Assembly (NCBI GenBank): GCA_026770705.1
Contig: JANJGN010000150.1
Coordinates: 1,116,001-1,180,000, forward strand
DNA length: 64,000 nt
Direction of reading: 5' to 3'
Source: Isurus oxyrinchus
Lineage: Eukaryota
Part shown: piece after piece, positions 6,245-62,050 of the stretch
Position numbering within the stretch: the stretch's first letter is position 1
Layout: each line of letters begins with the position of its first letter
Made by a program: the position numbers and the translations under genes
Notes under the pieces: model-generated
Told to the model about the DNA's origin: nothing
Database searches by the model: none
The model's input: the letters and a program-made list of their open reading frames with translations, nothing else

Positions 6245-6290
6245 ATGGGAGAGGTCGGTCTGATATTGATCTTCATCAGCTTGCTGCAAG
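6245..6290 (+). CDS. Gene A coding exon 1: signal peptide MGEVGLILIFISLLQ(G)
   Basis: Strong Kozak aagATGg, hydrophobic 15-mer, phase-1 donor caag|GTAC matching the V-set exon acceptor. Confidence 0.85.
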
Positions 6291-6432
6291 GTACAAATTC
6301 ATTACTGATCGGAACTCAGGGAATTGGATTCTTTCCTGGAGTGAGGAAGTGAACATTTAATTTTAGAGAACAGGGTTAGTGATCACACAGAGAGTGAGCG
6401 AATAGCGAGTCAGAGAATATAGCAAAAGAAAA

Positions 6433-6520
6433 AGACTCATACGGACTCGAAACGTCAACTCTGTTTCTCTCTCCACAGATGCTGTCAGACCTGCTGAGTT
6501 TTTCCAGCATTTTCTGTTTG
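6433..6520 (+). mobile_element. Truncated terminal fragment of an interspersed repeat, possibly Penelope-like (copy ~32345-32430)
   Basis: catacggactcGAAACGTCaact...ccacagatgctgtcagacctgctgag. Resembles the 3' half of a hammerhead-bearing repeat but has no CTGANGA box. Confidence 0.4.
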
Positions 6521-6619
6521 TGCATCAGAGAGCTTGTTTCAATAGGAATGACAGTGCATTTATATAGCACCTTTAATGCAGTAAAACATCCTTATTGCGT
6601 CACAGGATTCCCCCACAAG

Positions 6620-7075
6620 GGGTAACATCCCCTCAGCATCGACCCTGTCAAACCCCCCACCACCTCAGAATCTTATATGTTTCAATAAGATCACCTCTCA
6701 TTCTTCTAAACTCCAATGGATACAGGGCCCAACCTGCTCAACATTTCCTCACAGGACAAACCCTTTAATCCCAGGAATCAGCCCAGTGAACCTCCTCTGA
6801 ACTGCCTCCAATGCAGAGTCTATCCCTCCCTAAGTAAGGAGACCAGAACAGTACACACTGCTCCTGATACAATCTCACCAACGCCCTGTACAGTTGTAGC
6901 AAGACTCCCCTCCTTTTATACTCCATCCCTTTGCAATAAAGGCCAACATTCCACTTGTCTTCCTCATTCTGTGCTGTTCCTGAATGCTGACTTTCTGTGA
7001 TTCATGTACAAGGACACCCAGATCCCTCTGTGTCACATTCTGTAGACTCTCTCCATTGAAGTAATATACTGCTTT
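6620..7075 (-). mobile_element. CR1 LINE fragment, antisense (copy ~32530-32985)
   Basis: Gene B copy reads MEYKRRGVLLQLYRALVRLYQEQCVQFWSPY on the minus strand, a CR1 ORF2 signature. Confidence 0.8.
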
Positions 7076-7109
7076 TTGATGTCCTGTCCCCTCCCTTGTT
7101 GCCTTTCAG

Positions 7110-7466
7110 GAGTGACGTCAGAGGGATGGTCTATGAAGGCGCTGCCTCGGAGGGCCATCAGCAGCTCTTGTGTGGTTATTCCGTGTAGCTTTGACTTTCC
7201 TTCCCACTCTTACACAGCACTGCACGGAGCTTGGTATAAATATTGGTATAGATGGAAATATACCATCACATACACCAAAGATCCCAATTATGGGATGGCC
7301 ACATTCGTGGGACGTGCTAAAATAATCGGCGACTTGGAAGGGAAGAATTGTTCGGTGAGGATTGACAGTCTCAGAGCTGAAGATAGTGATGTGTATTACT
7401 TTTATGTGGATGTGGAGGGCTACACAGATCACACTTTTACACAACCAGTCCAACTCCAGGTTCTTG
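7110..7466 (+). CDS. Gene A exon: Siglec/MAG-like V-set Ig domain, essential Arg replaced by Tyr
   Basis: ttcAG| and |GTAAGT boundaries, 357 nt, phase 1-1. Motifs CVVIPCSFDFP, HGAWY, FVGRAKIIGDLEGKNCS, YYFYVDVEGYTDHTF. Siglec cysteine pattern (B-E strand pair plus an inter-domain Cys). Confidence 0.92.
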
Positions 7467-9638: not shown

Positions 9639-9926
9639 ATGTTCCAGATAAGCCAGTTATTGTGCTCCTGAAGGATTTACAGGAGGGGACTCCTGCACAT
9701 ATCATCTGTAAATGCCTCGACACCTGCCCTGATAACCACCCCAATCTAACCTGGAGTGAATTGCTGACTTCCTCGGTCAGCACCATCACAGAGAACGGTG
9801 GTGAGGTTTCTGCTCTACTGACCTTTAACCCTTCGTTCAAGCATCATGGACGAACTCTCCGCTGTACCTGTGACTACCCTCAAACCAGCCATCGAGTGGT
9901 CAACTCAGTTACTCTGAGTGTAAAGT
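9639..9926 (+). CDS. Gene A exon: Siglec domain-2 type C2-set Ig
   Basis: tacAG| and |GTAAGT, 288 nt, phase 1-1. DVPDKPVI...CKCLDTCPDNHPNLTW...LTFNPSFKHHGRTLRCTCDYP fits the Siglec/MAG D2 pattern. Confidence 0.92.
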
Positions 9927-11111: not shown

Positions 11112-11369
11112 ATTCTCCTCACAACACGTCTGTCAGGCTGACACGGGAAAAAGGAAAGATGATTTCTCTAAGTTGTTCCAGTGACGGGAATCCAGCAGTC
11201 CACAATTTCACCTGGTTTAAGATCTCCCAAGGCAAGGTGACAAATCTGGTGCTCACTGGTCAAACTATTACAGTTCCTTATGGATTCGATGAGGAAATCT
11301 CCTACTACTGTGAAGCAACAAGTATCCTGGGCAGTTCCCAGTCTCTGCCCATTAAAATTCCCACTGAAT
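11112..11369 (+). CDS. Gene A repeated C2-set Ig exon A1 (intact)
   Basis: 258 nt, phase 1-1, aaAG| and |GTGAGT. YSPHNTSV...SLSCSSDGNPAVHNFTWFK...YYCEATS. Confidence 0.9.
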
Positions 11370-11784
11370 GTGAGTACTTTTTTTATTCATACATGCGATG
11401 AAGGTGTCACTGGCTAGACCAACATTTATTGCCCATCCCAAATTATACTGGAACAGAGAGGCTTAGTGGGCCATTTCAGAGGATATTGAGGAGTCAACCA
11501 CGTTGCTGTGGATCTGGAGTCACATGTAAGGCCAGACCAGGTAAGGACAGCAGATTTCCCTCCCTAAAGGACATTAGTGAACCAGATGGGGTTTTAACGA
11601 CAATTGGCAATGTTTTCATGGTCAACAATAGACTTTCAATTACAGATTCTCATTGAATTGGTTGGAAAGTGGACATTTGAACACTATGGCCACAATTTGT
11701 CCACAATTATCTGTTGCCAGCCAATCAGCACCCTCTTCTCATGCAGTATAATTTGTTCTCCCTTTGAGATTTGGTAATCTTGCA

Positions 11785-11826
11785 ATTCTGTCCTGATGAG
11801 TGAAAGATGAAAAGCTTTGACAGAAT
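11785..11826 (+). ncRNA. Minimal type I hammerhead ribozyme-like motif, repeated in array introns
   Basis: attctgtc-CTGATGA-gtgaaagat-GAA-AAGCTT-t-gacagaat: 8-bp helix I, both core boxes, palindromic helix III. Well-paired copies at 14570, 16261, 19644, 39196, 42583, 44290, 47690. Activity unknown. Confidence 0.65.
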
Positions 11827-12827
11827 GTCTCCTTTTTCACCAATGCTCAGGTTCTGTCCTGCCAAGTGACTGTAAACATCGTCTTCTGTAAATCAAAATC
11901 CTGAATACACTCGTAAATGACTAACATATCATTCCTGGTACACAAATCAGAGAAAGTTAGAATGCAGGTGCAGCATGTGGTTAGGAAGGCAAATGAAACA
12001 TTGGTGTTTATTGCAAGGGAGATTGAGTGTAAAAGTAGAGACGCATGTTACAACTGTACAGGCTATTGGTGAGACTGCATCACGAGTACTGTGTACAGTC
12101 CTGGCTTCTGACATAGAAAAGATGGGCCGAATGCGCAGCTGTAGACTATCTTTAATTCTGTGTAACATTATCTGCTGGTGGGTAATACAGTGCAGTTTGT
12201 ACGTGTGCTAGTGTTGGAGCTGTATGCAGTCCATGATTATATAAAGAGACTATTGAAATCTAGAGTTTAAACCACATGAGTTTGCCCATATTTAATTCAT
12301 TTGCTGATATGGGCAACATTTATTGCCCATCCCTAATTACCCCTTGAGACATTGTCTTGAACCGCTTCACTACATGTGCTGTAGGTACACCCACAGCAAT
12401 GTTAGGCAGGGAGTTCCAGGATTTTGTCCCAGTGATAGTGAAGGAACAGCAATAGATTTCCAAGTCAAGGTGGTGTGTGGCTTGGAGGAGAACTTGCAGG
12501 TGGTGGTGTTCCCATGAATCTGCTGCCCTTGTCCTTCTAGATGTTAGAGGTCACAGGTTTGGAAGGTGCTGCTTAAGGAGCCTTGGTGAGCAGTTGCAGT
12601 GCATCTTGTAGATGGTACACACTGCTGCTACTGTGCGTCGGTGGTGGAGGGAGTGAATGATGAAGATGGTGGGTGGGATGCCAGTCAAGTGGGCTGCTTT
12701 GTCCTGGATGGTGTCGAGCTTCCTGAGTGTTGTTGGAGCTGCACTCATCCCAGCAACTGGAGAGTGTTCCATCACACTCCTGACTTTAGCTCAGTGGTTA
12801 ATGTGTTGATAATTTTGGATTTGAAAG

Positions 12828-12875
12828 AATCTCCTCACAACACGTCTGTCAGGATGACACTGGAAAAAGGAAAGA
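12828..12875 (+). pseudogene. Gene A pseudo-exon A2 (48-nt remnant after a ~650-bp deletion)
   Basis: Acceptor kept. The exon breaks at ggaaaga and joins downstream intron sequence. Donor lost. Splicing in would create TAA at the junction. Confidence 0.9.
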
Positions 12876-13896
12876 ATATTTGAAGAGCTTTGACAGAATG
12901 TCTCCTTTCTCACCAATGCTCAGGTTCTGTGCTGCCAAGTGACTGTAAACATCGTCTTCTGTAAATCAGAATCCTGAATACTCTCTCCAATGACTAACAC
13001 ATCATTCCTGGTACAAGAATCAGAGAACGTTAGTATGCAGGTGCAGCAAGTGGTTAGGAAGGCAAATGGAATGTTGGTGTTTATTGTAAGGGAGCTTGAG
13101 TGTAAAAGTAGGGACACATGTAACAACTGTACAGGCACTGGGTGAGACTGCATCACGAGTACTGTGTACAGTCTTGGCTTCTGACATAGAAAAGATGTGC
13201 CGAATGTGCAGCTGTAGACTACCTGTAATTCTGTGTAACATTACCTGCTGGTGATGAATACAGTGCAGTTTGTACATGTGCTAGTGTTGGAGCTGTATCC
13301 AGTCCATGATTATATAAAGAGACTGTTCAAATCTAGACTTTAAACCTCATGAGTTTGCCCATATTTAGTTCATTCACAGGATGTGGGAGCTGCTGATATG
13401 GGCGACATTAATTGCCCATCCCTAATTACCCCTTGTCCTGACCTGCTGCAGTCCACATGCTGTACGTATATCCACAGTGCTGTTAGGGAGGGAGTTCCAG
13501 GATTTTGACCCAGCGATAGTGAAGGAACGGCCGATATATTTCCAATTCAAGATGGTGAGAGGCTTGGTGGGGAACTTGCAGGTGGCGTTGTTCCCATTTT
13601 CCTGCTGCCCTTGTTCTTCTAGGTGTTAGGGATTGGAAGGTGCTGTTCAAGGAGCCTAGGTGTGCTGTTACATCTTGTAGACGGTACACACTGCTACCAC
13701 TGTGCATTCATGGTGGAGGGAGTGAATGTTGAAGATGGTGGGTGGGATGCCGTTCAAGTGGGCTGCTTTGTCCTGGATGGTGTCCAGCTTCATGAGTGTT
13801 GCTGGAGCTGCACTCATCCCGGCAAATGGAGAGTGTTCCATCACACTCCTGACTTTAGCTCAGTGGTTAATGTGTTGATAATTTTGTATTTGAAAG

Positions 13897-14154
13897 ATTC
13901 TCCTCACAACACGTCTGTCAGGCTGACACGGGAAAAAGGAAAGGTGATTTCTCTAAGTTGTTCCAGTGACGGGAATCCAGCAGTCCACAATTTCACCTGG
14001 TTTAAGATCTCCCAAGGAAAGGTGACGAAACTGGTGCTCGCTGGTCAAACTATTACAGTTCCTTATGGATTCGATGAGGAAATCTCCTACTACTGTGAAG
14101 CAACAAGTATCCTGGGCAGTTCCCAGTCTCTGCCCATTAGAATTCCCACTGAAT
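13897..14154 (+). CDS. Gene A repeated C2 exon A3 (intact)
   Basis: 258 nt, open frame, canonical splice sites. Confidence 0.9.
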
Positions 14155-15594
14155 GTGAGTACTTTTTTTATTCGTTCATGGGATGAAGATCTCACTGGCT
14201 AGACCAACATTTATTGCCCATCCCAAATTACCCTGGAACTGAATGGCTTGCTGGGCCATTTCAGAGGTCATTGAAGAGTCAACCACATCTCTGTGGGTCT
14301 GGACCTGCATGCAGGCCAGACCAGGTAAGGACGGCAGATTTCCCTCCCTAAAGGACATTAGTGACCCTGATGGGTTTTTAATGACAATCGGTAATGTTTT
14401 CATGGTCATCGTTAGAAATTCAATTCCAGGTCCTAATTGAATTGGTTGGCAAGTGGACATTTGACACTTTATCCACAATTTGCCCTCAATTATCTGCTTT
14501 CCAGGCAATCAGCACCACCTCCTCATGCAATCTCGATTGTTGTTCCCTTTGAGATTTGGTATTCTTGCAATTCTGTCCTGATGAGTGAAAAATGAAAAGC
14601 TTTGACAGAATGTCTCCTTTCTCACCAACGCTCAAATTTTTTACTGCCAAGTGACTATAAATATCTTCTTCTGTAAATTCTCCTGAATGCTCTCCCAATT
14701 GACTAATATATAATTTCTGGTACATGAAACATAGAAGGTTCGTATGCAGGTGCAGCAAGTGTTTAGGAAGGCAAATGGAATGTTGGTGTTTATTGCAAGG
14801 GAGATTAAGTAAAAGTATTAGGGATGTAGGGTGGAGGTGTACAGGTTCTTTTTGAGACTGCATCAGGAGTACTGTGTATAGTCTTGGCTTCTGACATAGA
14901 AAAGATGGGCTGAATGCGCAGTTGTAGACTACCTGTAATACTGTGTAACATTATCTGCTGGTGAGGAATACAGTGCAGTTTGTACTTGTGCTAGTGTTGG
15001 AGCTGTATCCAGTCCATGATTATATAAAGAGACTATTCAAATCTAGATTTTAAACCTCATGAGTTTGCCCATATTTAATTCATTTGATGATATGGGCAAC
15101 ATTTATTAGCCATCCTTAATTACCCCATGAGCCACTGTATTCAACTGCTGCAGTCCATGTGCTGTAGGTACACCCACAGCAATGTTAGGGAGGGAGTTCC
15201 AGGATTTTGACCCAGTGACAGTGAAGGAATGGCGATAGATTTCCAAGTCAGGATGGTGAGTGGCTTGCAGGGGATCTTGCAGGTGGCATTGTTCCTACCT
15301 ATCTGCTCCCCTTGTCCTACTTGATGTTAGGGTTTGGAAGGTGCTGTTCAAGGAGCCTTGGTGAGCTGTTGCAGTGCATCTTGTAGATGGTACACACTGC
15401 TGCCACTGTGCACCAGGGAGTGAATGTTGACTATGGTGGGTGGGGTACCGTTCAAGTGGGATGCTTTGTCCTGGATGGTGTCGAGCTTCCTGAGTGTTGC
15501 TGGAGCCGCACTCATCCCGGCAACTGGAGAGTGTTCCATCACACTCCTGACTTTAGCTCAGTGGTTAATGTGTTGATAATTTTGGATTTGAAAG

Positions 15595-15853
15595 ATTCTC
15601 CTCATAACACGTCTGTCAGGATGACACTGGAAAAAAGGAAAGATGATTTCTCTAAGTTGTTCCAGTGACGGGAATCCACCAATCCACAATTTCACCTGGT
15701 TTAAGAGCTCCCAAGGAAAAGTGATGAATTTGGTGCTCGCTGGTCAAACTATTACAGTTCCTTCTGGATTTGATGAGGAAATCTCCTACTACTGTGAAGC
15801 AACAAGTATCCTGGGCAGCTCCCAGTCTCTGCCCATTAGAACTCCCACAGAAT
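15595..15853 (+). pseudogene. Gene A repeated C2 exon A4 with +1 frameshift
   Basis: 259 nt. A6 instead of A5 run at 15631-15636 gives a stop at 15666-15668. Could be a homopolymer sequencing error. Confidence 0.65.
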
Positions 15854-17293
15854 GTGAGTAATTTTTTTATTCGTTCATGGGATGGAGGTGTCACTGACTA
15901 GACCAACATTTATTGCCCATCCCAAGTTACCCTGGAACAGAGTGGCTTGGTGGGCCATTTCAGAGGGTATTGAAGAATCAACCACATTGCTGGAGTCACA
16001 GGTACGCCAGAGCAGGTAAGGACAGCAGATTTCCCTCCCTAAAGGACATTAGTGACCAAGATGGGGTTTTAACGACAATCAGCACTGTTTTCATGGTCAT
16101 CATTAGACTTTCAATTCCAGATTCTAATTGAATTGGTTGGCAAGTGGACATTTGACCACTTTGGCCACAATTGGTCCACAATTATCTGTTGCCAGCTAAT
16201 CAGCACCCTCTTCTCATGCAGTATCAATTGTTGTTTCCTTTGAGATTTGGTATTCTGGCAATTCTGTCCTGATGAGTGAAAGATGAAAAGCTTTGACAGA
16301 ATGTCTCCTTTCTCACCAATGCTCAGGTTCTGTGCTGCCAAGTGATTGTAAACATCATCTTCTGTAAATCAGAATCCTGAATACTCTCTCCAATGACTAA
16401 CACATCATTCCTGGTACACGAATCAGAGAACGTTAGTATGCAGGTGCAGCAAGTGGTTAGGAAGGCAAATGGAACGTTGCTGTTTATTGTAAGGGAGCTC
16501 GCGTGTAAAAGTAGGGACGCATGTTACAACTGTACAGGCTCTTGGTGAGTCTGCATCACGAGTACTGTGTACAGTCTTTGATTCTGACATAGAAAAGATG
16601 GGCCAAATGTGCAGCTGAAGGCTACCTGTAATACTGGGTAATGTTATCTGCTGGTGAGGAATACAGTGCAGTTTCTACTTGTGCTAGTGTTGGAGCTGTA
16701 TCCAGTCCATGATTATATAAAGAGACTATTCAAATCTCGATTTTACACCTCATGAGTTTGCCCATATTTAATTCATTCACAGGATGTGGGAGCTGCTGAT
16801 ATGGGTAACATTTATTGCCTATCCTTAATTACCCCTTGTCCTGACCTGCTGCAGTCCATGTGCTGTACGTATACCCACAGTGCTGTTAGGGAAGGGGTTC
16901 CAGGATTTTGACCCAGCGATAGTGAAGGAACGGCCGATACATTTCCAATTCAGGATGGTGAGAGGCTTGGCGGGGAACTTGCAGGTGGCATTGTTCCCAT
17001 TTTTCTGCTGCCCTTGTTCTTCTGGTATTAAGGAATGGAAGGTGCTGTTCAAGGAGCCTTGGGGAGCTGTTGCAGTGCATCTTGTAGATGGTACACACTG
17101 GACATTCATGGTGGAGAGAGTGAATGTTGTAGATTGTGGGTGGGATGACGTTCAAGTGGGCTGTTTGTCCTGGATGGTGTCGAGCTTCCTGAGTGTTGCT
17201 GGAGCCGCACTCATCCAGGCAACTGGAGAGTGTTCCATCACACTCCTGACTTTAACTCAGTTATTAATGTGTTGATAATTTTGTATTTGAAAG

Positions 17294-17551
17294 ATTCTCC
17301 TCACAACACGTCTGTCAGGATGACACTGGAAAAAGGAAAGATGATTTCTCTAAGTTGTTCCAGTGAAGGGAATGCAGTAGTCCACAATTTCACCTGGTTT
17401 AAAATCTCACAAAGAAAAGTGACGAATCTGGCACTCGCTGGTCAAACTATTACAGTTCCTTATGGATTTGAAGAGCAAATCTCCTACTACTGTGAAGCAA
17501 CAAGCATCCTGGGCAGTTCCCAGTCTCTGCCCATTAGAATTCCCTCTGAAT
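17294..17551 (+). CDS. Gene A repeated C2 exon A5 (intact)
   Basis: 258 nt, open frame, canonical splice sites. Confidence 0.88.
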
Positions 17552-18975
17552 GTGAGTACTTTTCTTCATTTGTTCATGGGATGGAGGTGTCACTGGCTAG
17601 ACCAACATTTATTGCCCATCCCAAATTACCCTGGAACTGAATGGCTTGCTGGGCCATTACAGAGTGTATTGAAGAGTCAACCACATCTCTGTGGGTCTGG
17701 ACTTGCATGTAGGCCAGACCAGGTAAGGACAGCAAATTTCCCTCCCTAAAGAACATTAGTGACCCAGATAGGTTTTTAACGACAATCGGTAATGTTTTCA
17801 TGGTCATCGTTAGAATGTCAATTCCAGATTCTCATTGAATTGGTTGGCAAGTGGGCATTTGACACTTTATCCACAATTTGTCCACAATTATCTGCTTGCC
17901 AGCTAATCAGCACATTCTCCTCATGCAGTATCAATTGTTGTTCCCTTTCAGATTTGGTATTCTTGCAATTCTGATGAGTGAAAGATGAAAAGCTTTGACA
18001 GAATGTCTCCTTTCTCACCAATGCTCAGGTTCTGTGCTGCCAAGTGACTATAAACATCGTCTTCTGTAAATCAGAATCCTGAATACTCTCTCCAATGACT
18101 AACACATCATTCCTGGTACATGAATCATAGAAAGTTAGTATGCAGGTGCAGCAAGGTGTTAGGAAGGCAAATGGAACGTTGGTGTTTATTGTAAGCAAGC
18201 TTGAGTGTAAAAGTAGGGATGCATGTTACAACTCTATAGGCTCTTGGTGAGACTGCATCAGGAGTACTGTGTACAGTCTTGGCTTCTGACATAGAAAAGA
18301 TGGGCCGAATGCGCAGCTGTAGACTACTTGTAATTCTGTGTAACATTATCTGCAGGTGAGGAATACAGTGCAGTCTGTACATGTGCTAGTGTTGGATCTG
18401 TATCCAGTCCATAATTATATAAAGAGACTATTCAATTCTAGATTTTAAACCACATGAGTTTGCCCATATTAAATTCATTTGCTGATATGGGCAACATTTA
18501 TTGCCCATCCCTAATCACTCCATGTGCTGTAGGTACACCCACAGCAATGTTAGGCAGGGAGTTCCAGGATTATGACCCAGTGACAGTGAAGGAAATGACG
18601 ATAGATTTCCAACTCAGGATGGTGTGTGGATTGGAGGGGAACTTGCAGGTGGTTGTGTTCCCATGAACAGATGCCCTTGTCCTTCTAGATGTTAGAGGTG
18701 ATAGGTTTGGAAGGTGCTTTTCAAGGAGCCTTGGTGAGCTGTTGCAGTGCATCTTGTAGATGGTACACACTGCTGCTACTGTGCATTCAAGGTGGAGGGA
18801 GTGAATGTTGAAGATGGTGGGTGGGATGCCAATCAAGTGGGCTGCTTTGTCCTGGATGGTGTCGAGCTTCATGAGTGTTGTTGGAGCTGCACTCATCCCG
18901 GCAACTGGAGAGTGTTCCATCACACTCCTGACTTTAGCTCATTGGTTAATGTATTGATAATTTTGTATTTGAAAG

Positions 18976-49094: not shown

Positions 49095-50546
49095 GTGAGT
49101 ACTTTTTTTTATTTGTTGATGGGATGGAGGTCTCACTGGCTAGACCAACATTTATTGCCCATCCCAAATTACCCTTTAACTGAGTGGCTTGCTGTGCAAT
49201 TTCGGAGGGTATTGAAGTGTCAACCACATCACTCTGGGTCTGGAGTCACATGTTAGCTAGACCCGGTAAGGACGGCAGATTTCCCTCCCTGGAGGACATT
49301 AGTGGACCAAATGTATTTTAACAACAATCGGCAATGTTTTCGTGGTCAGTTAGTATTTTAATTGCAGATTCTAATTGAATTATTTGACAAGTGGACACTT
49401 GACACTTTGGCCACCATTTGTCCACAATTATCTGCTTGCCAGCCAATTAGCACACACTATTCATGCAGTATCAATTGTTCCTTTTGAGATTTGGTATTCT
49501 TGCAATTCTGTTCTGATGAGTGAAAGATGAAAAGCTTTTACAGAACATCTCCTTTTACACCAATGCTCAAGTTCAGTACTGCCAAGTGACTATAAATATC
49601 TTCTTCTGTAAATCAGAATCCTGAATACTCTCTCAAATGACCAACACATCATTCCTGGTACATGAATCATAGAAAGTTAGTATGCAGGTGCAGCAAGTGG
49701 TTAGGAAGGCAAATGGAACGCTGGTGTTTATTGCAAGGGAGCTTGAATGTAAAAGTAGGGACGTATGTAACAACTGTACAGGCTCTTGGTGAGACTGCAT
49801 CAGGTGTACTGTGTACAGTCTTGGCTTCTGACATAGAAAAGATGGGTCTGAATGTGCAGCTGTAGACTACCTGTAATTCTGTGTAACATTATCTGCAGGT
49901 GAGGAATACAGTGCAGTTTGTACATGTTATATTGTTGGAGCTGTATCCAGTCCATGATTATATAAAGAGACTATTCAAATCTAGATTTTAAACCTTATGA
50001 GTTTCCCCATATTTAAAACATTTGATGATATGGGCAACATTTATGGCCCATCTCTAATTACCCCTTGAGCCGTTGTCTTCAACTGCTGCAGTCTATGTGC
50101 AGTAGGTACACCCACAGTGCAGTTAGGCAGTGAAATCCAGGATTTTGGCCCAGTGACAGTGTAGGAATGGCAATAGATTTCCAAGTCAGGATGGTGATGA
50201 TTTGGAGGGGAACTTGCAGGTGGTGGTGTTCCCATGAGTCTTCTGTCCTTGTCCTTCTAGATGTTAGAGGTCACAGATTTGGAAAGTGCTGTTAAAGGAG
50301 CCTTGGTGAGCAGTTGCAGTGCATCTTGTAGATGGTACACACTGCTGCCACTGTGCATCGGCGGTGGAGAGAGTGAATGTTGAAGATGGTGGGTGGATGC
50401 CGTTCACGTGGGATGCTTTGTCCTGGATGGTGTCGAGCCTCTTGAGTTTTGTTGGAGTTGCACTCATCCAGGCAAGTGGAGAGTGTTCCATCACACTCCT
50501 GACTTTAGCTCAGTGTTTAATGTGTTGATAATTTTGTATTTCAAAG

Positions 50547-50804
50547 ATTCTCCTCGCAATACATCTATCAAGATGACACTGGAAAAAGGAAAGATGATTT
50601 CTCTAAGTTGTTCCAGTGACGGGAATCCAGCAGTCCACAATTTCACCTGGTTTAAGATCTTCCAAGGCAAGGTGACGACTCTGGTGCTCACTGGTCAAAC
50701 TATTACAGTTCCTTATGGATTTGATGAGGAAATCTCCTACTACTGTGAAGCAACAAGTATCCTGGGCAGTTCCCAGTCTCTGCCCATTAGAATTCCCACT
50801 GAAT
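50547..50804 (+). CDS. Gene B repeated C2 exon B9
   Basis: 258 nt, open, AG/GT, phase 1-1. Confidence 0.9.
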
Positions 50805-52264
50805 GTGAGTAATATTTTTATTCGTTCATGGGATGGAGGTGTCACTGACTAGACCAACATTTATTGCCCATGCCAAATTACCCTGGAACAGAATGGCTTG
50901 CTGGGCCATTTCAGAGGGTATTGAAGAGACAACCACATTGCTGTGAGTCTGGAGCCACATGTAGGCCAGACCAGGTAAGGACAGCAGATTTCCCTCCCTA
51001 AAGGACATTAGTGACCCAGATGGGGTTTTAACAACAATCGGCAATGTTTTCATGGTCATCGTTAGACTTTCAATTCCAGATTCTAATTGAATTGGTTTGC
51101 AAGTGGACATGTGACACTTTGGCAAAAATTTGTCCACAATTATCTGCTTCCAAGGCAATCAGCACACTCTACTCATGCAGTATCAATTGTTATTCCTTTT
51201 GAGATTTGGTATTCTTGCAATTCTGTTCTGATGAGTGAAAGATGAAAAGCTTTTAGAGAATGTCTCCTTTTACACCAATGCTTAAGTTTAGCACTGCCAA
51301 GTGACTATAAATATCTTCTTCTGTAAATCAGAATCTTGAATACTCTCTCAAATGACTAACATATCATTCCTGGTACAAGAATCAGAGAAAGTTAGTATGC
51401 AGCTGCAGCAAGTGGTTAGGAAGGCAAATGGAACGTTGGTGTTTATTGCAAGCAAGCTTGAGTGTAAAAGTAGGGACACATGTAACAACTGTACAGGCTC
51501 TTGGTGAGACTGCATCAGGAGTACTGTGTACAGTCTTGGCTTCTGACATAGAAAAGATGGGGCTGAATATGCAGCTGTAGACTACCTGTAATTCTGTGTA
51601 ACATTATCTGCAGGTGATGAATACAGTGCAGTTTGTACTTGTTCTAGTGTTGGAGCTGTATCCAGTCCATGATTATATAAAGAGACTATTCAAATCTAGA
51701 TTTTAAACCTCATGGGTTTGCCCATATTTAACTCATTTGCTGATATGGGCAACATTTATTGCCCATCCCTAATTTCCCCTTGAGCCATTGTCTTGAACTG
51801 CTGCAGTTCATGTGCAGTAGATACAACCACAGTGCAGTTAGGCAGTGAGTTCCAGGATTTTGGCCCAGTGACAGTGTAAGAATGGCAATAGATTTCCAAG
51901 TCAGGACGGTGAATGACTTGGAGGGGAACTTGCAGGTGGTGGTGTTTCCATGAGTCTTCTGTCCTTGTCCTTCTAGATGTTAGAGGTCACAGGCTTGGAA
52001 GCTGCTGTTAAAGGAGCCTTGGTGAGCAGTTGCAATGCATCTTGTAGATGGTACACACACTGCTGCCACTGTGCATCGGCGGTGGAGAGAGTGAATGATG
52101 AAGATGGTGGGTGGATGCTGTTCAAGTGGGCTGCTTTGTCCTGGATGGTATCGAGCCTCTTGATTTTTGTTGGAGCCGCACTCATCCAGGCAAGTGGAGA
52201 GTGTTCCATCACACTCCTGACTTTAGCTCAGTGGTTAATGTGTTGATAATTTTGTATTTGAAAG

Positions 52265-52522
52265 ATTCTCCTCGCAATACATCTGTCAGGATGACACTAG
52301 GAAAAGGAAAGATGATTTCTCTAAGTTGTTCCAGTGACGGCAATCCAGCAGTCCACAATTTCACCTGGTTTAAGATCTCCCAAGGCAAGGTGACGAATCT
52401 GGCACTCGCTGGTCAAACTATTACAGTGCCTTATGGATTTGATGAGGAAATCTCCTACTTCTGTGAAGCAACAAGTATCCTGGGCAGTTCCCAATCTCTG
52501 CCCATTAGAATTCACACTGAAT
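52265..52522 (+). CDS. Gene B repeated C2 exon B10
   Basis: 258 nt, open, AG/GT, phase 1-1. Confidence 0.9.
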
Positions 52523-53970
52523 GTGAGTAATTTTTTTTTTTCGTTCTTGGGATGAAGGTCTCACTTGCTAGACCAACATTTATTGCCCATCCCAAATTAC
52601 CCTGGAACAGAGTGGTTTGCTGGGCCATTTCAGAGTGTATTGAAGAGTCAACCACATTGCTGTGGGTCTGGAGCCACATGTAGGCCAGACCAGGTAAGCA
52701 CAGCAGATTTCCCTCCCTAAAGGACATTAGTGAACCAGATGGGTTTTTAACAACAATCGGAAATGTTTTGGTCATTGTTAGAATTTTAATTCCAGATTCT
52801 AATTGAATTGCTTGGCAAGTGGACATTTGACACTTTGGCAACAATTTGTCCACAATTATCTGCTTCCAAGGCAATCATCACACTCTACTCATGCAGTATC
52901 AATTGTTGTTCCTTTTGAGATTTGGTATTCTTGCAATTCTGATCTGATGAGTGAAAGATAAAAAGCTTTTACAGAATATCTCATTTCACACCATGCTCAA
53001 GTTTAGTACTGCCAAGTGACTATAAATATCTTCTTCTGTAAATCAGAATCCTGAATACTCTCTCAAATGACTAACACATCATTCCTGGTACATGAATCAT
53101 AGAAAGTTAGTATGCAGGTGCAGCAAGTGGTTAGGAAGGCAAATGGAACGTAGGTGTTTATTGTAAGGGAGCTCGAGTGTAAAAGTAGGGACGCATGTTA
53201 CAATTTTACAGGCTCTTGGTGAGACTGCATCAGGAGTACTGTGTACAGTCTTGGCTTCGGACATAGAAAAGATCCGGCTGAATATGCAGCTGTAGACTAC
53301 CTGTAATTCTGTGTAACATTATCTGCAGGTGAGGAATACAGTGCAGTTTGTACTTGTGCTAGTGTTGGAGCTGTATCCAGTCCATGATTACATAAAGAGA
53401 CTATTCAAATCTAGATTTTAAACCTCATGAGTTTGCCCATATTTAATTCATTTGCTGATATGGGCAACATCCCTAATTACCGCTTGAGCCATTGTCTTGA
53501 ACTGCTGCAGTCCATGTGCATTAGGTACAACCACAGCAATGTTAGGCAGTGAGTTCCAGGATTTTGACCCAGTGACAGTGTAAGAATGGCAATAGATTTC
53601 CAAGTCAGGATGGTGAATGACTTGGAGGGGAACTTACAGGTGGTGGTGTTTCCATGAGTCTTCTGTCCTTGTCCTTCTAGATGTTAGAGGTCACAGATTT
53701 GGAAAGTGCTGTTAAAGGAGCCTTGGTGAGCAGTTGCAGTGCATCTTGTAGATGGTACACACACTGCTGCCACTGTGCATCGACGGTGGAGAGAGTGAAT
53801 GTTGAAGATGATGAGTGGTATGCCACTCAAGTGGGCTACTTTGTCCTGGATGGTATCAAGCTTCTTGAGTGTTGTGGGAGCTGCACTCATCCAGGCAAGT
53901 GGAGAGTATTCTATTCACACCCCTGACTTCAGCTCAGTGTTTAATGTGTTGATAATTTTGTATTTGAAAG

Positions 53971-54228
53971 ATTCTCCTCACAACACGTCTGTCAGGATGA
54001 CACTGGAAAAAGGAAAGATGATTTCTCTGAGTTGTTCCAGTGACGGGAATCCAGCAGTCCACAATTTCACCTGGTTTAAGATCTCCCAAGGCAAGGTGAC
54101 GAATCTCGCGCTCGCTGGTCAAACTATTGCAGTTTCTTATGGATTCGATGAGGAAATCTCCTACTACTGTGAAGCAACAAGTATCCTGGGCAGTTCCCAG
54201 TCTCTGCCCATTAGAATTCCCACTGAAT
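53971..54228 (+). CDS. Gene B repeated C2 exon B11 (last)
   Basis: 258 nt, open, AG/GT. Downstream intron leaves the unit consensus just after the donor. Confidence 0.9.
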
Positions 54229-55526: not shown

Positions 55527-55832
55527 ATGGTGCGGTCATACTGCCAGAGTCCAGGTGTACACAGTATCTGACCAACCTCACCTGCCTCTGTCTGGTCCGT
55601 GCAAACTCCTCAGTCCACATCACGTGGGCTCTGCCGGGAAGGACGCTCAGACAGACAGGATCGGACGGGATCTACAAGACGGTGTCGGCCAGGGTCGGTC
55701 CCTTGGTAACCAACACGCTGACCATCAGTGGGAGCAACATGGCCGTTCAGACGGTGAACTGCTCTGTGGTGAATGATCGAGGGGACAGATACTTACAGAG
55801 GCGATTGGAAATCCAGGCTGTGGGGGAACAAG
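55527..55832 (+). CDS. Gene B membrane-proximal Ig exon, MAG domain-5-like (absent from gene A)
   Basis: cacAG| and caag|GTCAGT, 306 nt, phase 1-1. YGAVILPESRC...TCLCLVRAN...LVTNTLTI...VNCSVVNDRG parallels MAG D5 (ESHC...CLCVVKSN...LTSILTL...VICTARNLYG, recalled). Confidence 0.88.
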
Positions 55833-57584: not shown

Positions 57585-57705
57585 CTGGAACAACGTCTGG
57601 CCTGATGTGGAAAATTGGATTAGGTTCTGTGGGAGGGGCTGTCCTGCTCATCACTACGACAATCACGATTTACCTCATTACAAAGACATTCAGGAGAACG
57701 GACAA
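57585..57705 (+). CDS. Gene B transmembrane exon: AGTTSGLMWKIGLGSVGGAVLLITTTITIYLITKTFRRTDK
   Basis: cttctcctccttAG| and |GTGAGT, phase 1-2. Hydrophobic span then basic residues. LMWKIG resembles the start of the MAG TM. Confidence 0.85.
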
Positions 57706-57732
57706 GTGAGTGTGGGCACAACTGGGAAATCA

Positions 57733-60700
57733 ACCCTCCCTTTCTCTGTAACCTACTCCAATCCTTACACACCTCCCTATTTCTGTAACCTCCTCCAGTC
57801 CCTACAACCCTCCCTTTCTCTGTAACCTCCTCCAGCCCCTACAACCCTCCCTATCTCTGTAACCTCCTCCAGCCCCTACAACCCTCCCTATCTCTGTAAC
57901 CTCCTCCAGTCCCTACAACCCTCCCCATCTCAGTGACCCACATCAGACCCTACAACCCTCCCTATCTCTGTAACCTCCTCCAGCCCCGACAACCCTCCCT
58001 ATCTCTGTAACCTCCTCCAGCCCCGACAACCCTCCCTATCTCTGTAACCTCCTCCAGCCCCAACAACCCTCCCTTTCTGTAACCTCCTCCAGCCCCTACA
58101 ACCCTCCCTATCTCTGTAACCTCCAGCCCCTACAACCCTCCCTATCTCTGTAACCTCCTCCAGCCCCTACAACCCTCCCTTTCTCTGTAACCTCCTCCAG
58201 CCCCTACAACCCTCCTTATCTCTGTACCCTCCTCCAGCACCTACAACCCTCCCTTTCTGTAACCTCCTCCAGTCCCTACAACCCTCCCCATCTCAGTGAC
58301 CCACATCAGACCCTACAACCCTCCCTATCTCTGTAACCTCCTCCAGCCCCTACAACCCTCCCTATCTCTGTAACCTCCTCCAGCCCCTACAACCCTCCCT
58401 ATCTCTGTAACCTCCTCCAGCCCCTACAACCCTCCCTATCTCTGTAACCTCCTCCAGCCCCTACAACCCTCCCTATCTCTGTAACCTCCTCCAGCCCCTA
58501 CAACCCTCCCTATCTCTGTAACCTCCTCCAGCCCCTACAATCCTCCCTTTCTGTAACCTCCTCCAGCACCTACAACCCTCCCTATCTCTGTAAACTCCTC
58601 CAGCCCCTACAACCCTCCCTATCTCTGTAACCTCCTCCAGCCCCGACAACTCTCCCTATCTCTGTAACCTCCTCCAGCCCCTACAACCCTCCCTATCTCT
58701 GTAACCTCCTCCAGCCCCTACAACCCTCCCTATCTCTGTAACCTCCTCCAGCCCCTACAACCCTCCCTATCTCTGTAACCTCCTCCAGTCCCTACAACCC
58801 TCCCCATCTCAGTGACCCACATCAGACCCTACAACCCTCCCTATCTCTGTAACCTCCTCCAGCCCCGACAACCCTCCCTTTCTGTAACCTCCTCCAGCCC
58901 CTACAACCCTCCCTATCTCTGTAACCTCCTCCAGCCCCGACAACCCTCCCTATCTCTGTAACCTCCTCCAGTCCCTACAACCCTCCCTATCTCAGTGACC
59001 CACATCAGACCCTACAACCCTCCCTATCTCTGTAACCTCCTCCAGCGCCTACAACCCTCCCTATCTCTGTAACCTCCTCCAGCCCCTACAACCCTCCCTA
59101 TCTCTGTAACCTCCTCCAGCCCCTACAACCCTCCCTATCTCTGTAACCTCCTCCAGCCCCTACAACCCTCCCTATCTCTGTAACCTCCTCCAGTCCCTAC
59201 AACCCTCCCCATCTCAGTGACCCACATCAGACCCTACAACCCTCCCTATCTCTGTAACCTCCTCCAGCCCCGACAACCCTCCCTTTCTGTAACCTCCTCC
59301 AGCCCCTACAACCCTCCCTATCTCTGTAACCTCCTCCAGCCCCGACAACCCTCCCTATCTCTGTAACCTCCTCCAGTCCCTACAACCCTCCCTATCTCAG
59401 TGACCCACATCAGACCCTACAACCCTCCCCATCTCTGTAACCTCCTCCAGCGCCTACAACCCTCCCTATCTCTGTAACCTCCTCCAGCCCCTACAACCCT
59501 CCGTATCTCTGTAACCTCCTCCAGCCCGGACAACCCTCCCTATCTCTGTAACCTCCTCCAGCCCCGACAACCCTCCCTATCTCTGTAACCTCCTCCAGCC
59601 CCGACAACCCTCCCTATCTATATAGCCTCCTGCATCCTGCCAGAATCAGGAAAAGAACCGGAGGGGGAGATGAGGGGAATTTTATTTTGACACAGCGAGT
59701 TGTTGTGATCTGGAAGGCGCTGCCTGAAAGGGCGGTGGAAGCAGATTCAATAGCAACTTTCACAAGGGGGAATTGGATAAATACTCAAAGGGGAAAATTT
59801 TGCAGGTCTATGAGTGAAAGAGTGGGGTCACGGACATTCGGGACTAATTGGACAGATCTTTCAAAGAGCCAGCACAGGCACAATGGGCTGAATGGTTTGT
59901 TTTGTCTCCTTATTCCTCCTCCCTATCTCTGTAACCTCCTCCAGCCCCGACAACCCTCCCTATCTCTGTAACCTCCTCCAGTCCCTACAACCCTCCCTAT
60001 CTCAGTGACCCACATCAGACCCTACAACCCTCCCCATCTCTGTAACCTCCTCCAGCGCCTACAACCCTCCCTATCTCTGTAACCTCCTCCAGCCCCTACA
60101 ACCCTCCGTATCTCTGTAACCTCCTCCAGCCCGGACAACCCTCCCTATCTCTGTAACCTCCTCCAGCCCCTACAATCCTCCCTATCTCTGTAACCTCCTC
60201 CAGCCCCTACAACCCTCCCAATCTCTGTAACCTCCTCCAGCCCCGACAACCCTCCCTATCTCTGTAACCTCCTCCAGCCCCGACAACCCTCCCTTTCTCT
60301 GTAACCTCCTCCAGCCCCGACAACCCTCCCTATCTATATAGCCTCCTGCATCCTGCCAGAATCAGGAAAAGAACCGGAGGGGGAGATGAGGGGAATTTTA
60401 TTTTGACACAGCGAGTTGTTGTGATCTGGAAGGCGCTGCCTGAAAGGGCGGTGGAAGCAGATTCAATAGCAACTTTCACAAGGGGGAATTGGATAAATAC
60501 TCAAAGGGGAAAATTTTGCAGGTCTATGAGTGAAAGAGTGGGGTCACGGACATTCGGGACTAATTGGACAGATCTTTCAAAGAGCCAGCACAGGCACGAT
60601 GGGCTGAATGGTTTGTTTTGTCTCCTTATTCCTCCTCCCTATCTCTGTAACCCCTCCAGCCCCTACAACCCTCCCTATCTCTGTAACCCCTTCCAGCACC

Positions 60701-60783
60701 TACAACTCTCCCTATCTCTGTAACATCCTCCAGCACCTACAACCCTCCCTATCTCTGTAACCTCCTCCATCCCCTACAACCCT
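57733..60783 (+). repeat. 37-bp C-rich minisatellite with an internal 716-bp duplication containing a CR1 fragment
   Basis: Unit ccctccctatctctgtaacctcctccagcccctacaa. ORFs at 59687 and 60403 are near-identical. Confidence 0.97.
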
Positions 60784-61074
60784 CGAGATCTCAGCGCTCC
60801 TCCAATTCAGGCATCTCGATCATACCGATACCCATCGCTCCACCATTGGCGGATGTGCAAACAGCTGCCTGGGGCCCTAAGCTCGACAATTCCCTCTCTA
60901 AACCTCTACACCTCTCTCTCTCCTCCTTAAAAATATATCATTGATCGAGTTTTTTGCTGCTCGTGCTTTCACAACTTAATGTCAAATTTTGTGCAATAAT
61001 TGCTTCTCGGATGTTTTATCTCATTAACAGTGCTATAGATAAACATAAGTTGGTGTTGTGGTTGAAGTCCTATT

Positions 61075-61640
61075 AATCTGGGGGGTTATATCCAATTCTG
61101 GGCGTGTTGCACTTTGGGAAGGATGTCAGGGCCTTGGAGAGGGTGCAGAGGAGATTTACCAGGATGTTCCCAGGAATGAGGGACTTCAGATCATGTGGAG
61201 AGACTGGAGAAGCTGGGATTGTTCTCCTTCGAGCAGAGAAGGTTAAGGGGGAGATTGAATTGAAGCGTTCAAAATCATAAGGGGTTTGGATAGAGTAAAT
61301 AAGGAGAAACTGTTTCCAGTGGCAGGATGGTCGGTAAACAGAAGGACATAGATTGATGAGAATTGGTAAAAGAACCAGATGGGGAGATAAGAATTTTTTT
61401 TTTACACAGCGAGTTGTTGTGATCTGGAAGGCGCTGCCTGAAAGGGCGGTGGAAGCAGATTCAATAGCAACTTTCACAAGGGGGGAATTGGATAAATACT
61501 CAAAGGGGAAAATTTTGCAGGTCTATGAGGGAAAGAGTGGGGTCACGGACATTCGGGACTAATTGGACAGATCTTTCAAAGAGCCAGCACAGGCACGATG
61601 GGCTGAATGGTTTGTTTTGTCTCCTTATTCCTCCTCCTGA
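61075..61640 (+). mobile_element. CR1 LINE 3' fragment
   Basis: gccttggagagggtgcagaggagatttaccagg...FFTQRVVVIWKALPERAVEA. Confidence 0.85.
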
Positions 61641-61917
61641 AATATATCACCTCTGAATTCTCTGAATTAAATGTCATCTCTCTGTCCAAACTCCCAATTA
61701 GTCCCTGTCCTCCTGAAGTCACTGACCCATCCTTTTCCCAGTTTGTCATGTTCCTGAACTCAACACCAATCCGGAGTTGGGAAAATTTCAGACAGTGAAC
61801 CAACCACAAGAATTAAAATTCAGTCACAATATTATAATCTGGTTGCAACCTCCAGCATTACAATGGGAATCTTATCATTTCCCTGGCTTGTAATTTTATC
61901 TTAACCTACGTCCTCAG

Positions 61918-62050
61918 ACCAGGAGGAATTGGAATAAAACAGACAGGAAAGGCGATCCCAGAGGAGCAGCCTGAAATGATGTCCGTGAGACAGAAACCAA
62001 ACAGAATGAAATGTGTTGAAATATTCTCTCCCCTTCCCAAAATGGGCCAG
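61918..62050 (+). CDS. Gene B candidate cytoplasmic exon 1 (KPGGIGIKQTGKAIPEEQPEMMSVRQKPNRMKCVEIFSPLPKMGQ); gene probably continues beyond the window
   Basis: tcctcAG| and cag|GTAATA, 133 nt, phase 2-0, open and in frame with the TM exon. Non-repetitive sequence. Confidence 0.6.

What the first reader, a model, noticed from the sequence alone, without database searches (positions are those of the whole stretch)
6245..62050. Paired Siglec/MAG-like receptors: shared head, different stalk length, unrelated TM and tail
Seen: two tandem genes share an identical signal peptide, ~98% identical V-set and D2 exons and the same repeated C2 exon, then diverge completely. Gene A goes straight to a TM and an ITIM+ITSM tail (6 intact Ig domains). 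Gene B adds a MAG-D5-like domain, a different TM and a different tail (14 Ig domains). Known: a shared ligand-binding end with divergent signalling ends is the paired-receptor design of mammalian Siglec-5/14 and Siglec-11/16. Inference: an independently evolved paired or decoy receptor system in a probable cartilaginous fish, built from MAG-like parts. I do not know of such a system being described, but cannot check.
Basis: partly seen in the sequence, partly recalled or inferred. Interest (0 to 1): 0.85.

Follow-up and report, generated by a model that had tools for sequence, protein, structure and literature searches.

The report
Shark Siglec-like twins with swapped tails
Two neighbouring shark genes encode almost the same MAG-like, arginine-less Siglec head on stalks of different length and on two different membrane and tail modules. 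This is a real modular receptor pair, but it is not shown to be an inhibitory/activating pair, and automatic shark annotations already predict the design.

Summary
Gene A (6245-25441) and gene B (32156 to beyond 62050) share:
- an identical signal exon;
- V exons that are 97.8% identical;
- D2 exons that are 97.9% identical;
- the same 258-nt phase-1 C2 exon in a 1.7-kb tandem array.

Gene A has 4 intact C2 copies, one frameshifted and one truncated. Gene B has 11 intact copies. Their 3' parts share no exon.

Gene A ends in a CD33-related-type TM plus ITIM/ITSM cassette. Gene B keeps a MAG-D5-like domain, a MAG-type TM and its own tail, which runs off the window.

The gap at 29227-29373 is intergenic. 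Each gene lies in one contig, so only their adjacency rests on the scaffold join.

Both heads carry Tyr where Siglecs have the sialic-acid-binding Arg. So do all shark and ray relatives found.

Basking-shark models show both architectures, including the C2-to-TM-A junction. RNA contigs show C2-to-C2 and TM-A-to-cyt1 splices, but not C2-to-TM-A.

Nothing marks gene B as activating. The scan has already found similar Siglec pairs on other DNA of this genome. No paper on them was found.

The parts
6245..6290 (+). Gene A signal-peptide exon (ATG at 6245, phase-1 donor)
   Evidence: Read directly. It is identical to 32156-32201.
7110..7466 (+). Gene A V-set exon of Siglec/MAG type, with Tyr at the canonical Arg position (YYFYVD)
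   Evidence: Pfam V-set and Ig_CD22. The best solved relative is MAG at E 2e-14, with MAG R118 aligned to Tyr. Splice sites were read.
9639..9926 (+). Gene A D2 (C2-set) exon, phase 1-1
   Evidence: Borders. The best solved relative is MAG D2 at E 2e-4, followed by Siglec-8, -10 and -5.
11112..19233 (+). Gene A stalk array of six 1.7-kb units. Intact 258-nt C2 exons lie at 11112, 13897, 17294 and 18976. A relic at 12828 is truncated. The exon at 15595-15853 is frameshifted by one extra A at 15631-15636.
   Evidence: pN/pS among gene A exons is 0.52. A C2-to-C2 splice joint (19233 to 18976) appears in RNA contigs of 4 runs.
23228..23324 (+). Gene A TM exon (TM-A cassette, phase 1 to 2): RDCSKWTVGLLTAGIMLSVFLAGIFIFICVR
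   Evidence: It is 90-97% identical to the TM of Cetorhinus and Carcharodon Siglec-like models. The joint 23324 to 24190, with GT..AG ends, appears in RNA contigs of 3 runs.
24190..24271 (+). Gene A cytoplasmic exon 1 (phase 2 to 0)
   Evidence: It is 85-93% identical to the relatives. The spliced joint was seen.
25193..25441 (+). Gene A last coding exon, with ITIM LLYANI, ITSM TEYTLI and the stop codon
   Evidence: It is 83-85% identical to the tails of Cetorhinus P0014, P0180, P0183 and P0181. Poly(A) signals start at 26271.
29227..29373 (.). Assembly gap or masked stretch between gene A and gene B. It is intergenic.
   Evidence: The paralogous spot in the upstream copy is also N (1540-1725). 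It was not filled and not looked up.
32156..32201 (+). Gene B signal-peptide exon
33022..33378 (+). Gene B V-set exon, also with Tyr at the Arg position. Two of its 5 aa differences from gene A flank that Tyr (V>E and V>M).
35308..35595 (+). Gene B D2 exon
36801..54228 (+). Gene B stalk array: 11 intact 258-nt C2 exons at 36801, 38522, 40220, 41917, 43616, 45318, 47020, 48837, 50547, 52265 and 53971
   Evidence: pN/pS is 0.31. B-only clades in the unit tree point to block duplications.
55527..55832 (+). Gene B membrane-proximal Ig exon, homologous to MAG D5
   Evidence: The only solved relative is MAG residues 397-482, E 9e-8. It is 97% identical to the Cetorhinus B-type models.
57585..57705 (+). 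Gene B TM exon (TM-B, phase 1 to 2): GTTSGLMWKIGLGSVGGAVLLITTTITIYLITKTFRRTD, with a MAG-type LMW(A)K[IV]G motif
   Evidence: It is 92% identical to Cetorhinus. The motif is shared with frog and gecko MAG.
61918..62050 (+). Gene B cytoplasmic exon 1 (no Tyr, phase-0 donor). The gene continues beyond the window.
   Evidence: It is 47% identical to the same tail part of S. canicula and C. punctatum relatives.

Best explanation
Gene A and gene B are two real, tandem members of an elasmobranch family of MAG-like Siglec-type receptors. In this family the V-set carries a conserved Tyr in place of the sialic-acid-binding Arg.

**How the pair is built.**
- The ectodomain stalk is built from a tandem array of interchangeable phase-1 C2 exons. 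Unit gain, loss or skipping therefore changes stalk length without breaking the frame.
- Gene B keeps the family's own MAG-like base: a D5-like domain, a MAG-type TM and its own tail.
- Gene A is a chimera. The same head and stalk are joined to the TM + ITIM/ITSM cassette that many neighbouring CD33-related-type shark Siglec genes use.
- The heads stay nearly identical through recent duplication or gene conversion over the 5' region.

**Inferred function.**
- Both proteins bind the same or a very similar ligand, which need not be sialic acid in the canonical mode.
- They present the head at different heights: about 6-7 Ig domains in gene A against 14 in gene B.
- Gene A signals through SHP-type phosphatases recruited to its ITIM/ITSM.
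- Gene B's output is different and still unknown. Nothing shows it to be activating.
For: **Anatomy and frames.**

**Family placement.**
- The V exon matches MAG best, then sialoadhesin and Siglec-5, with Arg replaced by Tyr.
- D2 matches MAG D2, and the D5-like exon matches MAG D5 only.
- Tyr is conserved in relatives from Cetorhinus, Scyliorhinus, Chiloscyllium, Stegostoma, Pristis and Amblyraja.

**Selection.** C2 exons are under purifying selection: pN/pS is 0.31-0.52, and exons are 93.6% identical against about 79% for the aligned introns (85-91% for whole units by blastn).

**Head similarity.**
- A tract of about 98% identity covers promoter, signal exon, intron 1 and V exon.
- The two heads are closer to each other (95.8% in V, 96.8% in D2) than to any Cetorhinus head (84-94%).

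**Both architectures in the basking shark.**
- Models P0180 and P0187 have signal peptide, Y-type V, D2, one C2, then 'C'-RDSSKW TM-A and the ITIM/ITSM tail. P0183 also shows the C2-to-TM-A junction.
- P0001 and P0152 are B-type, with 8-9 C2 domains, D5 and TM-B. All lie on the same contig with neighbouring accession numbers.
- The TM-A cassette also sits behind Arg-type V heads and behind I-set arrays.

**RNA.** Contigs show exact C2-to-C2 and TM-A-to-cyt1 splice joints.
Against: - No C2-to-TM-A joint (19233 to 23228) was listed in the four runs. One contig carries about 296 nt upstream of the TM-A exon that were not reported as lying on the C2 exon. The cassette may therefore be used by another head or by a paralogue.
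- Gene A has one frameshifted C2 exon that keeps its splice sites, and one truncated C2 exon.
- Gene B's last exon or exons lie outside the window.
- Adjacency rests on a scaffold join.
- No binding, expression-site or signalling data exist.
- Gnomon models are predictions.
Confidence: 0.62

Rival explanations
1. Gene A and gene B form a classical inhibitory/activating (or decoy) pair. Gene A inhibits through its ITIM/ITSM. Gene B couples through its TM lysine to a DAP12-, DAP10- or FcR-gamma-like adaptor, or has a short silent tail, as Siglec-14 and Siglec-16 do.
For: - Near-identical heads on linked genes with a conversion-like tract.
- A Lys precedes TM-B and is conserved in catshark and bamboo-shark relatives.
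- Cetorhinus B-type models end in a short Tyr-free tail...TDKRKMRRIRK.
- The in-window tail exon has no Tyr.
- Other clusters of this genome were noted to have Arg-bearing activating-type anchors.
Against: - The Lys sits at the outer boundary, not inside the hydrophobic core. An equivalent Lys occurs in gene A's TM (SKWTVGLL) and in MAG (LMWAKVG), so it does not set gene B apart.
- Gene B's cyt1 exon has an open phase-0 donor. Its homologues go on to NLYENY...LVYTNI or DLYANC.
- An earlier unchecked note places a tyrosine-motif terminal exon about 600 nt beyond the window.
- No short-tail exon like the Cetorhinus one was found in 57.7-64 kb.
Confidence: 0.1
2. Gene A is a decaying or non-functional copy. 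Its head and stalk array are no longer joined productively to the TM-A cassette. That cassette is either an orphan or serves another transcript.
For: - One C2 exon is frameshifted yet keeps its AG/GT borders, and one is truncated.
- pN/pS is higher in gene A (0.52) than in gene B (0.31).
- No C2-to-TM-A joint was listed, and a contig has about 296 nt of unexplained sequence upstream of TM-A.
- A loose end at 24187 shows a read-through from another cassette's tail (EEETEYAQI-R) into a cyt1 exon. This matches the Carcharodon model P0176.
Against: - The frameshift is a single A in a 5/6-A homopolymer in an otherwise open exon, so it could be an assembly error or very recent.
- All other exons, splice sites and the whole 716-codon chain with 4 C2 exons are intact.
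- Gene A's V exon is closer to Cetorhinus heads than gene B's is.
- The same architecture is modelled in three Cetorhinus genes.
- Contigs built from k-mers break at repeated exons, so a missing joint is weak evidence.
Confidence: 0.2
3. Assembly artefact: one locus was falsely duplicated, or two unlinked contigs were joined at the gap.
For: - The N runs at 1540-1725 and 29227-29373 sit at the same paralogous place, next to TG-rich repeats.
- The contig ends 1-1532 and 27695-29226 are 99.3% identical.
Against: - Gene A and gene B differ by 2-15% along 11 kb and have different array structure and non-homologous 3' exons.
- Each gene lies within one contig.
- Cetorhinus has both types on one contig with neighbouring accession numbers.
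- Array units differ by 9% or more, which is enough for long reads to separate.
Confidence: 0.05

Closest known systems
Primate paired Siglecs (Siglec-5/14, Siglec-11/16)
   Same: Linked genes with near-identical first two Ig domains. A high-identity tract covers the 5' region, as produced by gene conversion. One partner has an ITIM plus ITSM-like tail (PMC5701461, PMC4042635, PMC13358205).
   Different: The second partner here has no demonstrated charged-TM, short-tail activating module. Stalk lengths differ by 7-8 Ig domains. The head lacks the canonical Arg.
Myelin-associated glycoprotein (MAG, Siglec-4)
   Same: MAG is the best solved relative of the V, D2 and D5-like exons. Gene B's TM shares the LMW(A)K[IV]G juxtamembrane motif.
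   Different: MAG has 5 Ig domains, Arg118 and a single conserved gene. Here there are 6-7 or 14 Ig domains, Tyr at that position, and a multigene tandem family. Gene A carries a non-MAG TM and tail.
Basking shark (Cetorhinus maximus) Gnomon models XP_078389716-725 ('B-cell receptor CD22-like') and XP_078389731-733 ('Siglec-13')
   Same: The same two architectures occur: Y-type head, C2 repeats, D5 and TM-B; and Y-type head, C2 and TM-A with ITIM/ITSM. Domain identity is 84-97%.
   Different: Copy numbers differ: 8-9 C2 and 1 C2 there, against 11 and 4-5 here. The Cetorhinus A-type and B-type heads are less alike (91.5% in V) than the two heads here (95.8%). These are predictions and are not described in any paper found.
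Sialoadhesin (Siglec-1) and CD22
   Same: A long stalk of repeated C2 domains holds a Siglec V-set far from the membrane. The repeated C2 exon resembles CD22 d6-d7.
   Different: The stalk here is a young tandem array of near-identical exons (93.6% identical), not 16 old, diverged domains.
Arg-less Siglecs (for example human Siglec-XII; recalled, and mentioned in PMC8615218's abstract)
   Same: The essential arginine is replaced while the rest of the receptor is kept.
   Different: In human it is a recent loss. Here Tyr is fixed across sharks and rays, which points to a maintained alternative binding mode.

Membership tests
Siglec family (I-type lectins) | N-terminal V-set domain of Siglec type, with CxxxPC and the E-strand Cys pattern, and Siglec V-sets as best matches | tested here: met
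   Pfam V-set and Ig_CD22. The top PDB hits are MAG, sialoadhesin, Siglec-5, CD33 and Siglec-7, -8 and -10, with CVxIPC and NC(S/T) aligned.
Siglec family (I-type lectins) | Conserved F-strand arginine that binds the sialic-acid carboxylate | tested here: not met
   MAG R118 and sialoadhesin R97 align to Tyr (YYFYVD) in gene A, gene B and all elasmobranch relatives.
Siglec family (I-type lectins) | Binds sialylated glycans | not testable with these tools
   Needs glycan arrays or cell binding with and without sialidase.
MAG (Siglec-4) orthologue | Five Ig domains (V + 4 C2) with the MAG D5 and TM | tested here: not met
   Gene B has MAG-like V, D2, D5 and TM but 14 Ig domains. Gene A lacks the D5 and has a different TM.
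MAG (Siglec-4) orthologue | Single-copy gene in conserved synteny | not tested
   This is a multicopy tandem family here and in Cetorhinus.
Paired immune receptors (Siglec-5/14 type) | Closely linked genes with near-identical ligand-binding domains | tested here: met
   Signal exon 100%, V 97.8% and D2 97.9% identical, with a tract of about 98% over the 5' region. Linkage depends on the scaffold join at 29227-29373.
Paired immune receptors (Siglec-5/14 type) | One partner with a cytoplasmic ITIM | tested here: met
   Gene A has LLYANI plus TEYTLI, 24 residues apart. The TM-A-to-cyt1 splice is seen in RNA contigs. The link of this tail to this head in RNA was not seen.
Paired immune receptors (Siglec-5/14 type) | Other partner with a short tail and a charged TM residue that recruits an ITAM adaptor | tested here: inconclusive
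   Gene B has only a boundary Lys, which gene A and MAG share. Its tail is at least 45 aa and continues outside the window. Its homologues carry Tyr motifs.
CD33-related Siglecs (for gene A's 3' cassette) | Membrane-proximal ITIM plus distal ITSM-like motif | tested here: met
   The same cassette follows Arg-type V-set heads in Cetorhinus, Carcharodon and Scyliorhinus models named Siglec-8, -12, -13 or CD33-like.
CD33-related Siglecs (for gene A's 3' cassette) | Arg-bearing V-set head of CD33 type | tested here: not met
   No Arg-type V exon lies in the window. Gene A's head is the Y-type MAG-like one.

The most novel reading that the evidence does not exclude
An elasmobranch-wide, arginine-less MAG-like Siglec lineage has evolved a new conserved ligand-binding mode. 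In lamniform sharks it works as a height-coded pair. Gene conversion keeps the same head on a short ITIM/ITSM receptor and on a long 14-domain MAG-type receptor. Stalk length is tuned by an 'accordion' of interchangeable exons, so that cis and trans (or near and far) ligand are read out through different signals.
Probability: 0.2. Interest if true: 0.75.

Novelty: new variant of a known kind. Interest (0 to 1): 0.5.

Why it matters
Paired and modular Siglecs are usually described as a fast-evolving mammalian feature. A study of teleost Siglecs states that fish genomes lack CD33-related Siglecs (PMC7226832).

This locus shows several things in a shark, and so near the base of jawed vertebrates:
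- a CD33-type ITIM/ITSM cassette already exists;
- that cassette is shuffled between different heads;
- near-identical heads are kept on different signalling modules;
- stalk length changes through an exon array;
- an arginine-less head has been kept since before sharks and rays split, which argues for a non-canonical ligand worth finding.

The novelty is limited. Gene predictions with both architectures are already public, and the scan found similar Siglec pairs elsewhere in this genome.

Tried and rejected
- **V exon word-index search.** A search with the V exon alone found nothing because of the length window. The full scan of representatives worked.
- **B-type tail search.** A search with the catshark protein returned only catshark proteins, so no lamniform B-type tail end was obtained.
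- **TM-B against gecko MAG.** BLASTP gave no alignment because the query is short and hydrophobic. Only a motif match and a small global alignment support the MAG-type TM. In one search two short TM peptides were typed into the script.
- **Relics of the other gene's 3' exons.** tblastn at relaxed E-values found no relic of gene B's D5, TM or tail behind gene A's array. It found no TM-A cassette behind gene B.
- **Short Cetorhinus-type tail.** The motif RKMRRIRK was not found in 57.7-64 kb.
- **GC-rich block.** ORFs in 19.7-22.3 kb have no Pfam match.
- **Rfam.** No family matched at gathering threshold.
- **False duplication.** Rejected on divergence and on the different 3' ends.
- **Spliced models.** Every exon was searched by reference on its own.
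- **N runs.** They were neither filled nor looked up.

Full report
**Layout and the gap**

The window has three N runs: 1540-1725, 4240-4503 and 29227-29373. It therefore consists of four contigs.
- Gene A lies wholly in 4504-29226.
- The in-window part of gene B lies wholly in 29374-64000.
- The flagged gap is intergenic. It sits 3.8 kb after gene A's stop codon at 25441 and 2.8 kb before gene B's ATG at 32156. No exon or reading frame crosses it.
- Its flanks are colinear with the paralogous copy at 1-3560, which has its own N run at the same paralogous place. Both right flanks start in the same TG-rich repeat.

The gene models do not depend on the gap. The order and adjacency of the two genes do.

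**Observation**

A self-comparison shows a segmental duplication, 1-12874 against 27695-38568, followed by 1.7-kb tandem arrays.

Exon by exon:

| Exon | Gene A | Gene B | Difference |
|---|---|---|---|
| Signal | 6245-6290 | 32156-32201 | identical |
| V | 7110-7466 | 33022-33378 | 8 of 357 nt, 5 of 118 aa |
| D2 | 9639-9926 | 35308-35595 | 6 of 288 nt, 3 of 95 aa |

The repeated C2 exon is 258 nt, phase 1-1, with AG/GT borders.
- Gene A has four intact copies.
- Gene A has one relic cut after about 50 nt at a deletion junction.
- Gene A has one copy with a single extra A in an A5/A6 homopolymer, and that copy is otherwise open.
- Gene B has eleven intact copies.

The 3' parts share only a 33-bp minisatellite and interspersed repeats.

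Gene A continues as follows:
- a TM exon at 23228-23324;
- a 27-codon exon at 24190-24271;
- a last exon at 25193-25441, carrying LLYANI (ITIM) and TEYTLI (ITSM) 24 residues apart.

With four C2 exons the chain is 2148 nt and stays in frame.

Gene B continues as follows:
- an Ig exon at 55527-55832;
- a TM exon at 57585-57705;
- a Tyr-free exon at 61918-62050, whose phase-0 donor shows that the gene runs on beyond the window.

**What the parts are**
- The V exon's best solved relatives are MAG (E 2e-14), sialoadhesin and Siglec-5.
- In those alignments the sialic-acid-binding arginine (MAG R118, sialoadhesin R97) is a tyrosine in both genes.
- D2 matches MAG D2 best.
- Gene B's extra domain matches only MAG D5.
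- The repeated C2 exon is a generic C2/I-type Ig domain, with VEGFR2 and then CD22 d6-d7 as its nearest solved relatives.
- Gene B's TM shares the LMW(A)K[IV]G juxtamembrane motif with frog and gecko MAG. Gene A's TM does not. This is motif-level evidence only.

**Relatives**

A full scan found close relatives only in elasmobranchs. They are NCBI models from these species:
- Cetorhinus maximus (92% identity in V);
- Scyliorhinus canicula;
- Chiloscyllium punctatum;
- Stegostoma tigrinum;
- Pristis pectinata;
- Amblyraja and Leucoraja.

The models carry various names: 'CD22-like', 'MAG-like', 'Siglec-13' and 'sialoadhesin-like'. All have Tyr at the Arg position. The replacement is therefore old and maintained, not a recent loss.

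Cetorhinus B-type models have 8-9 C2 domains, the D5-like domain and TM-B.

Gene A's TM, cyt1 and cyt2 exons are 83-97% identical to a cassette found in many Cetorhinus and Carcharodon models. In those models the cassette follows different ectodomains:
- Arg-type tandem V-sets ('Siglec-12', 'Siglec-13', 'CD33-like');
- arrays of I-set domains;
- the same Y-type head, D2 and one C2 (XP_078389731, XP_078389732 and XP_078389733). Here the junction reads ...PTE-C-RDSSKW..., which is the C2-to-TM-A junction predicted for gene A.

No Arg-type V exon exists in the window. Both architectures therefore coexist on one Cetorhinus contig, with neighbouring accession numbers.

Gene A is best read as a chimera of the family's head and stalk with the CD33-related-type inhibitory cassette. 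Gene B keeps the MAG-like base.

**Evolutionary signals**
- Identity between gene A and gene B is about 98% and uniform from promoter to the end of the V exon, intron 1 included. It is 92-98% around D2 and 85-93% in the arrays.
- The two heads are closer to each other (95.8% in V, 96.8% in D2) than to any Cetorhinus head (84-94%). The Cetorhinus A-type and B-type heads are only 91.5% alike.
- This pattern fits gene conversion or a young 5' duplication. It does not prove either.
- C2 exons are far better conserved than their introns and have pN/pS of 0.31 (B-B), 0.40 (A-B) and 0.52 (A-A). Both arrays have therefore been kept as coding sequence.
- B-only clades in the unit tree indicate block duplications inside gene B's array.

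**RNA**

The runs offered were Logan contigs of uncertain type from two coded organisms. I laid four of them on 18950-24949.
- They gave exact-border joints for C2-to-C2 (19233 to 18976, in all four runs).
- They gave exact-border joints for TM-A-to-cyt1 (23324 to 24190, GT..AG, in three runs). Spliced RNA of such genes therefore exists.
- No 19233-to-23228 joint was listed, although 36 joints were not shown.
- One 449-nt contig has about 296 nt upstream of the TM-A exon that were not reported on the C2 exon.

The link between this head and this tail thus remains unshown in RNA. It rests on intact splice sites and frames and on the Cetorhinus models.

**Is it a paired receptor?**

By the definition in PMC13358205:
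- linkage and near-identical binding domains are met;
- an ITIM partner is met;
- an activating partner is not shown.

Gene B's only charged TM-region residue is a boundary Lys that gene A and MAG also have. Gene B's tail continues beyond the window. Its catshark and bamboo-shark homologues end in DLYANC or NLYENY...LVYTNI. Cetorhinus models instead end in a short Tyr-free tail, so this question stays open.

**Novelty**

I found no paper on shark Siglec pairs. A teleost study states that fish genomes lack CD33-related Siglecs (PMC7226832). Against that:
- both architectures are already in public automatic annotation;
- the scan has followed up similar Siglec pairs on other pieces of this genome.

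What is particular here is the arginine-less MAG-like head, the exon-array stalk with 4-5 against 11 usable units, and the MAG-type partner in place of an Arg-anchored one.

**Limits**
- Function is inferred, not tested.

Noticed in passing
window 3467-3831 (inverted), 7599-8489, 24470-24830, 33511-34023, 56022-56708: The same 33-bp minisatellite (CAGTACTGAGGGAGTGCTGCACTGTCAGAGGGT) sits in introns of both genes and upstream of them. In the RNA-like contigs the bin 24550-24749 reaches summed depths up to 1.4 million. It is therefore a very abundant, probably transcribed, genome-wide satellite.
   Followed up: partly
window 57731-59631 and 59918-60347: A 37-bp satellite with 52 and 12 copies fills much of gene B's intron between the TM exon and the first cytoplasmic exon. 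Two copies of a repeat of about 0.7 kb lie at 59204-60792.
   Followed up: no
window 1540-1725 and 29227-29373: The two N runs interrupt the two paralogous copies at the same sequence position, within 7 nt on the left and with identical right flanks. This suggests one element that is hard to assemble or was masked on purpose. I did not probe it.
   Followed up: partly
window 24187 (loose end, run X1): A contig joins ...GAAGAGGAGACGGAATACGCACAGAT (EEETEYAQI) to a cyt1-type exon. The product, AQIR-RKTA, is the same tail-to-cyt1 read-through as in the Carcharodon model P0176. Tandem TM-A cassettes seem to be spliced together from a donor inside a paralogue's last exon.
   Followed up: partly
window 23225-23324 (run X2, 449-nt contig): About 296 nt lie upstream of the TM-A exon in this spliced contig and were not reported on the C2 exon. 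The length would fit the D2 exon (288 nt) plus 8 nt, or part of a V exon. This is unresolved.
   Followed up: no
window 19730-22300: A GC-rich block (55% GC) in gene A's last large intron has long ORFs on both strands and RNA-like contigs laid on it, but no Pfam match. It is probably a transposon relic.
   Followed up: partly
whole window, notably the array introns (for example 11785-11826): Earlier notes propose hammerhead-ribozyme-like motifs in the array introns. Rfam at gathering threshold finds no family anywhere in the window. A laxer search was not run.
   Followed up: partly
window 1-1532 against 27695-29226, and upstream of the window: The duplication reaches the window's first base at 99.3% identity. 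Gene A's array ends 7986 nt before 27695. This suggests a further A-type gene copy upstream, so whole-gene tandem units of 26 kb or more.
   Followed up: no
window 33300-33325 (gene B V exon): Two of the five amino-acid differences between the heads flank the Tyr that replaces the binding Arg: DVYYFYVDVEGY in gene A against DEYYFYVDMEGY in gene B. Both changes are unique to gene B among the relatives seen.
   Followed up: partly
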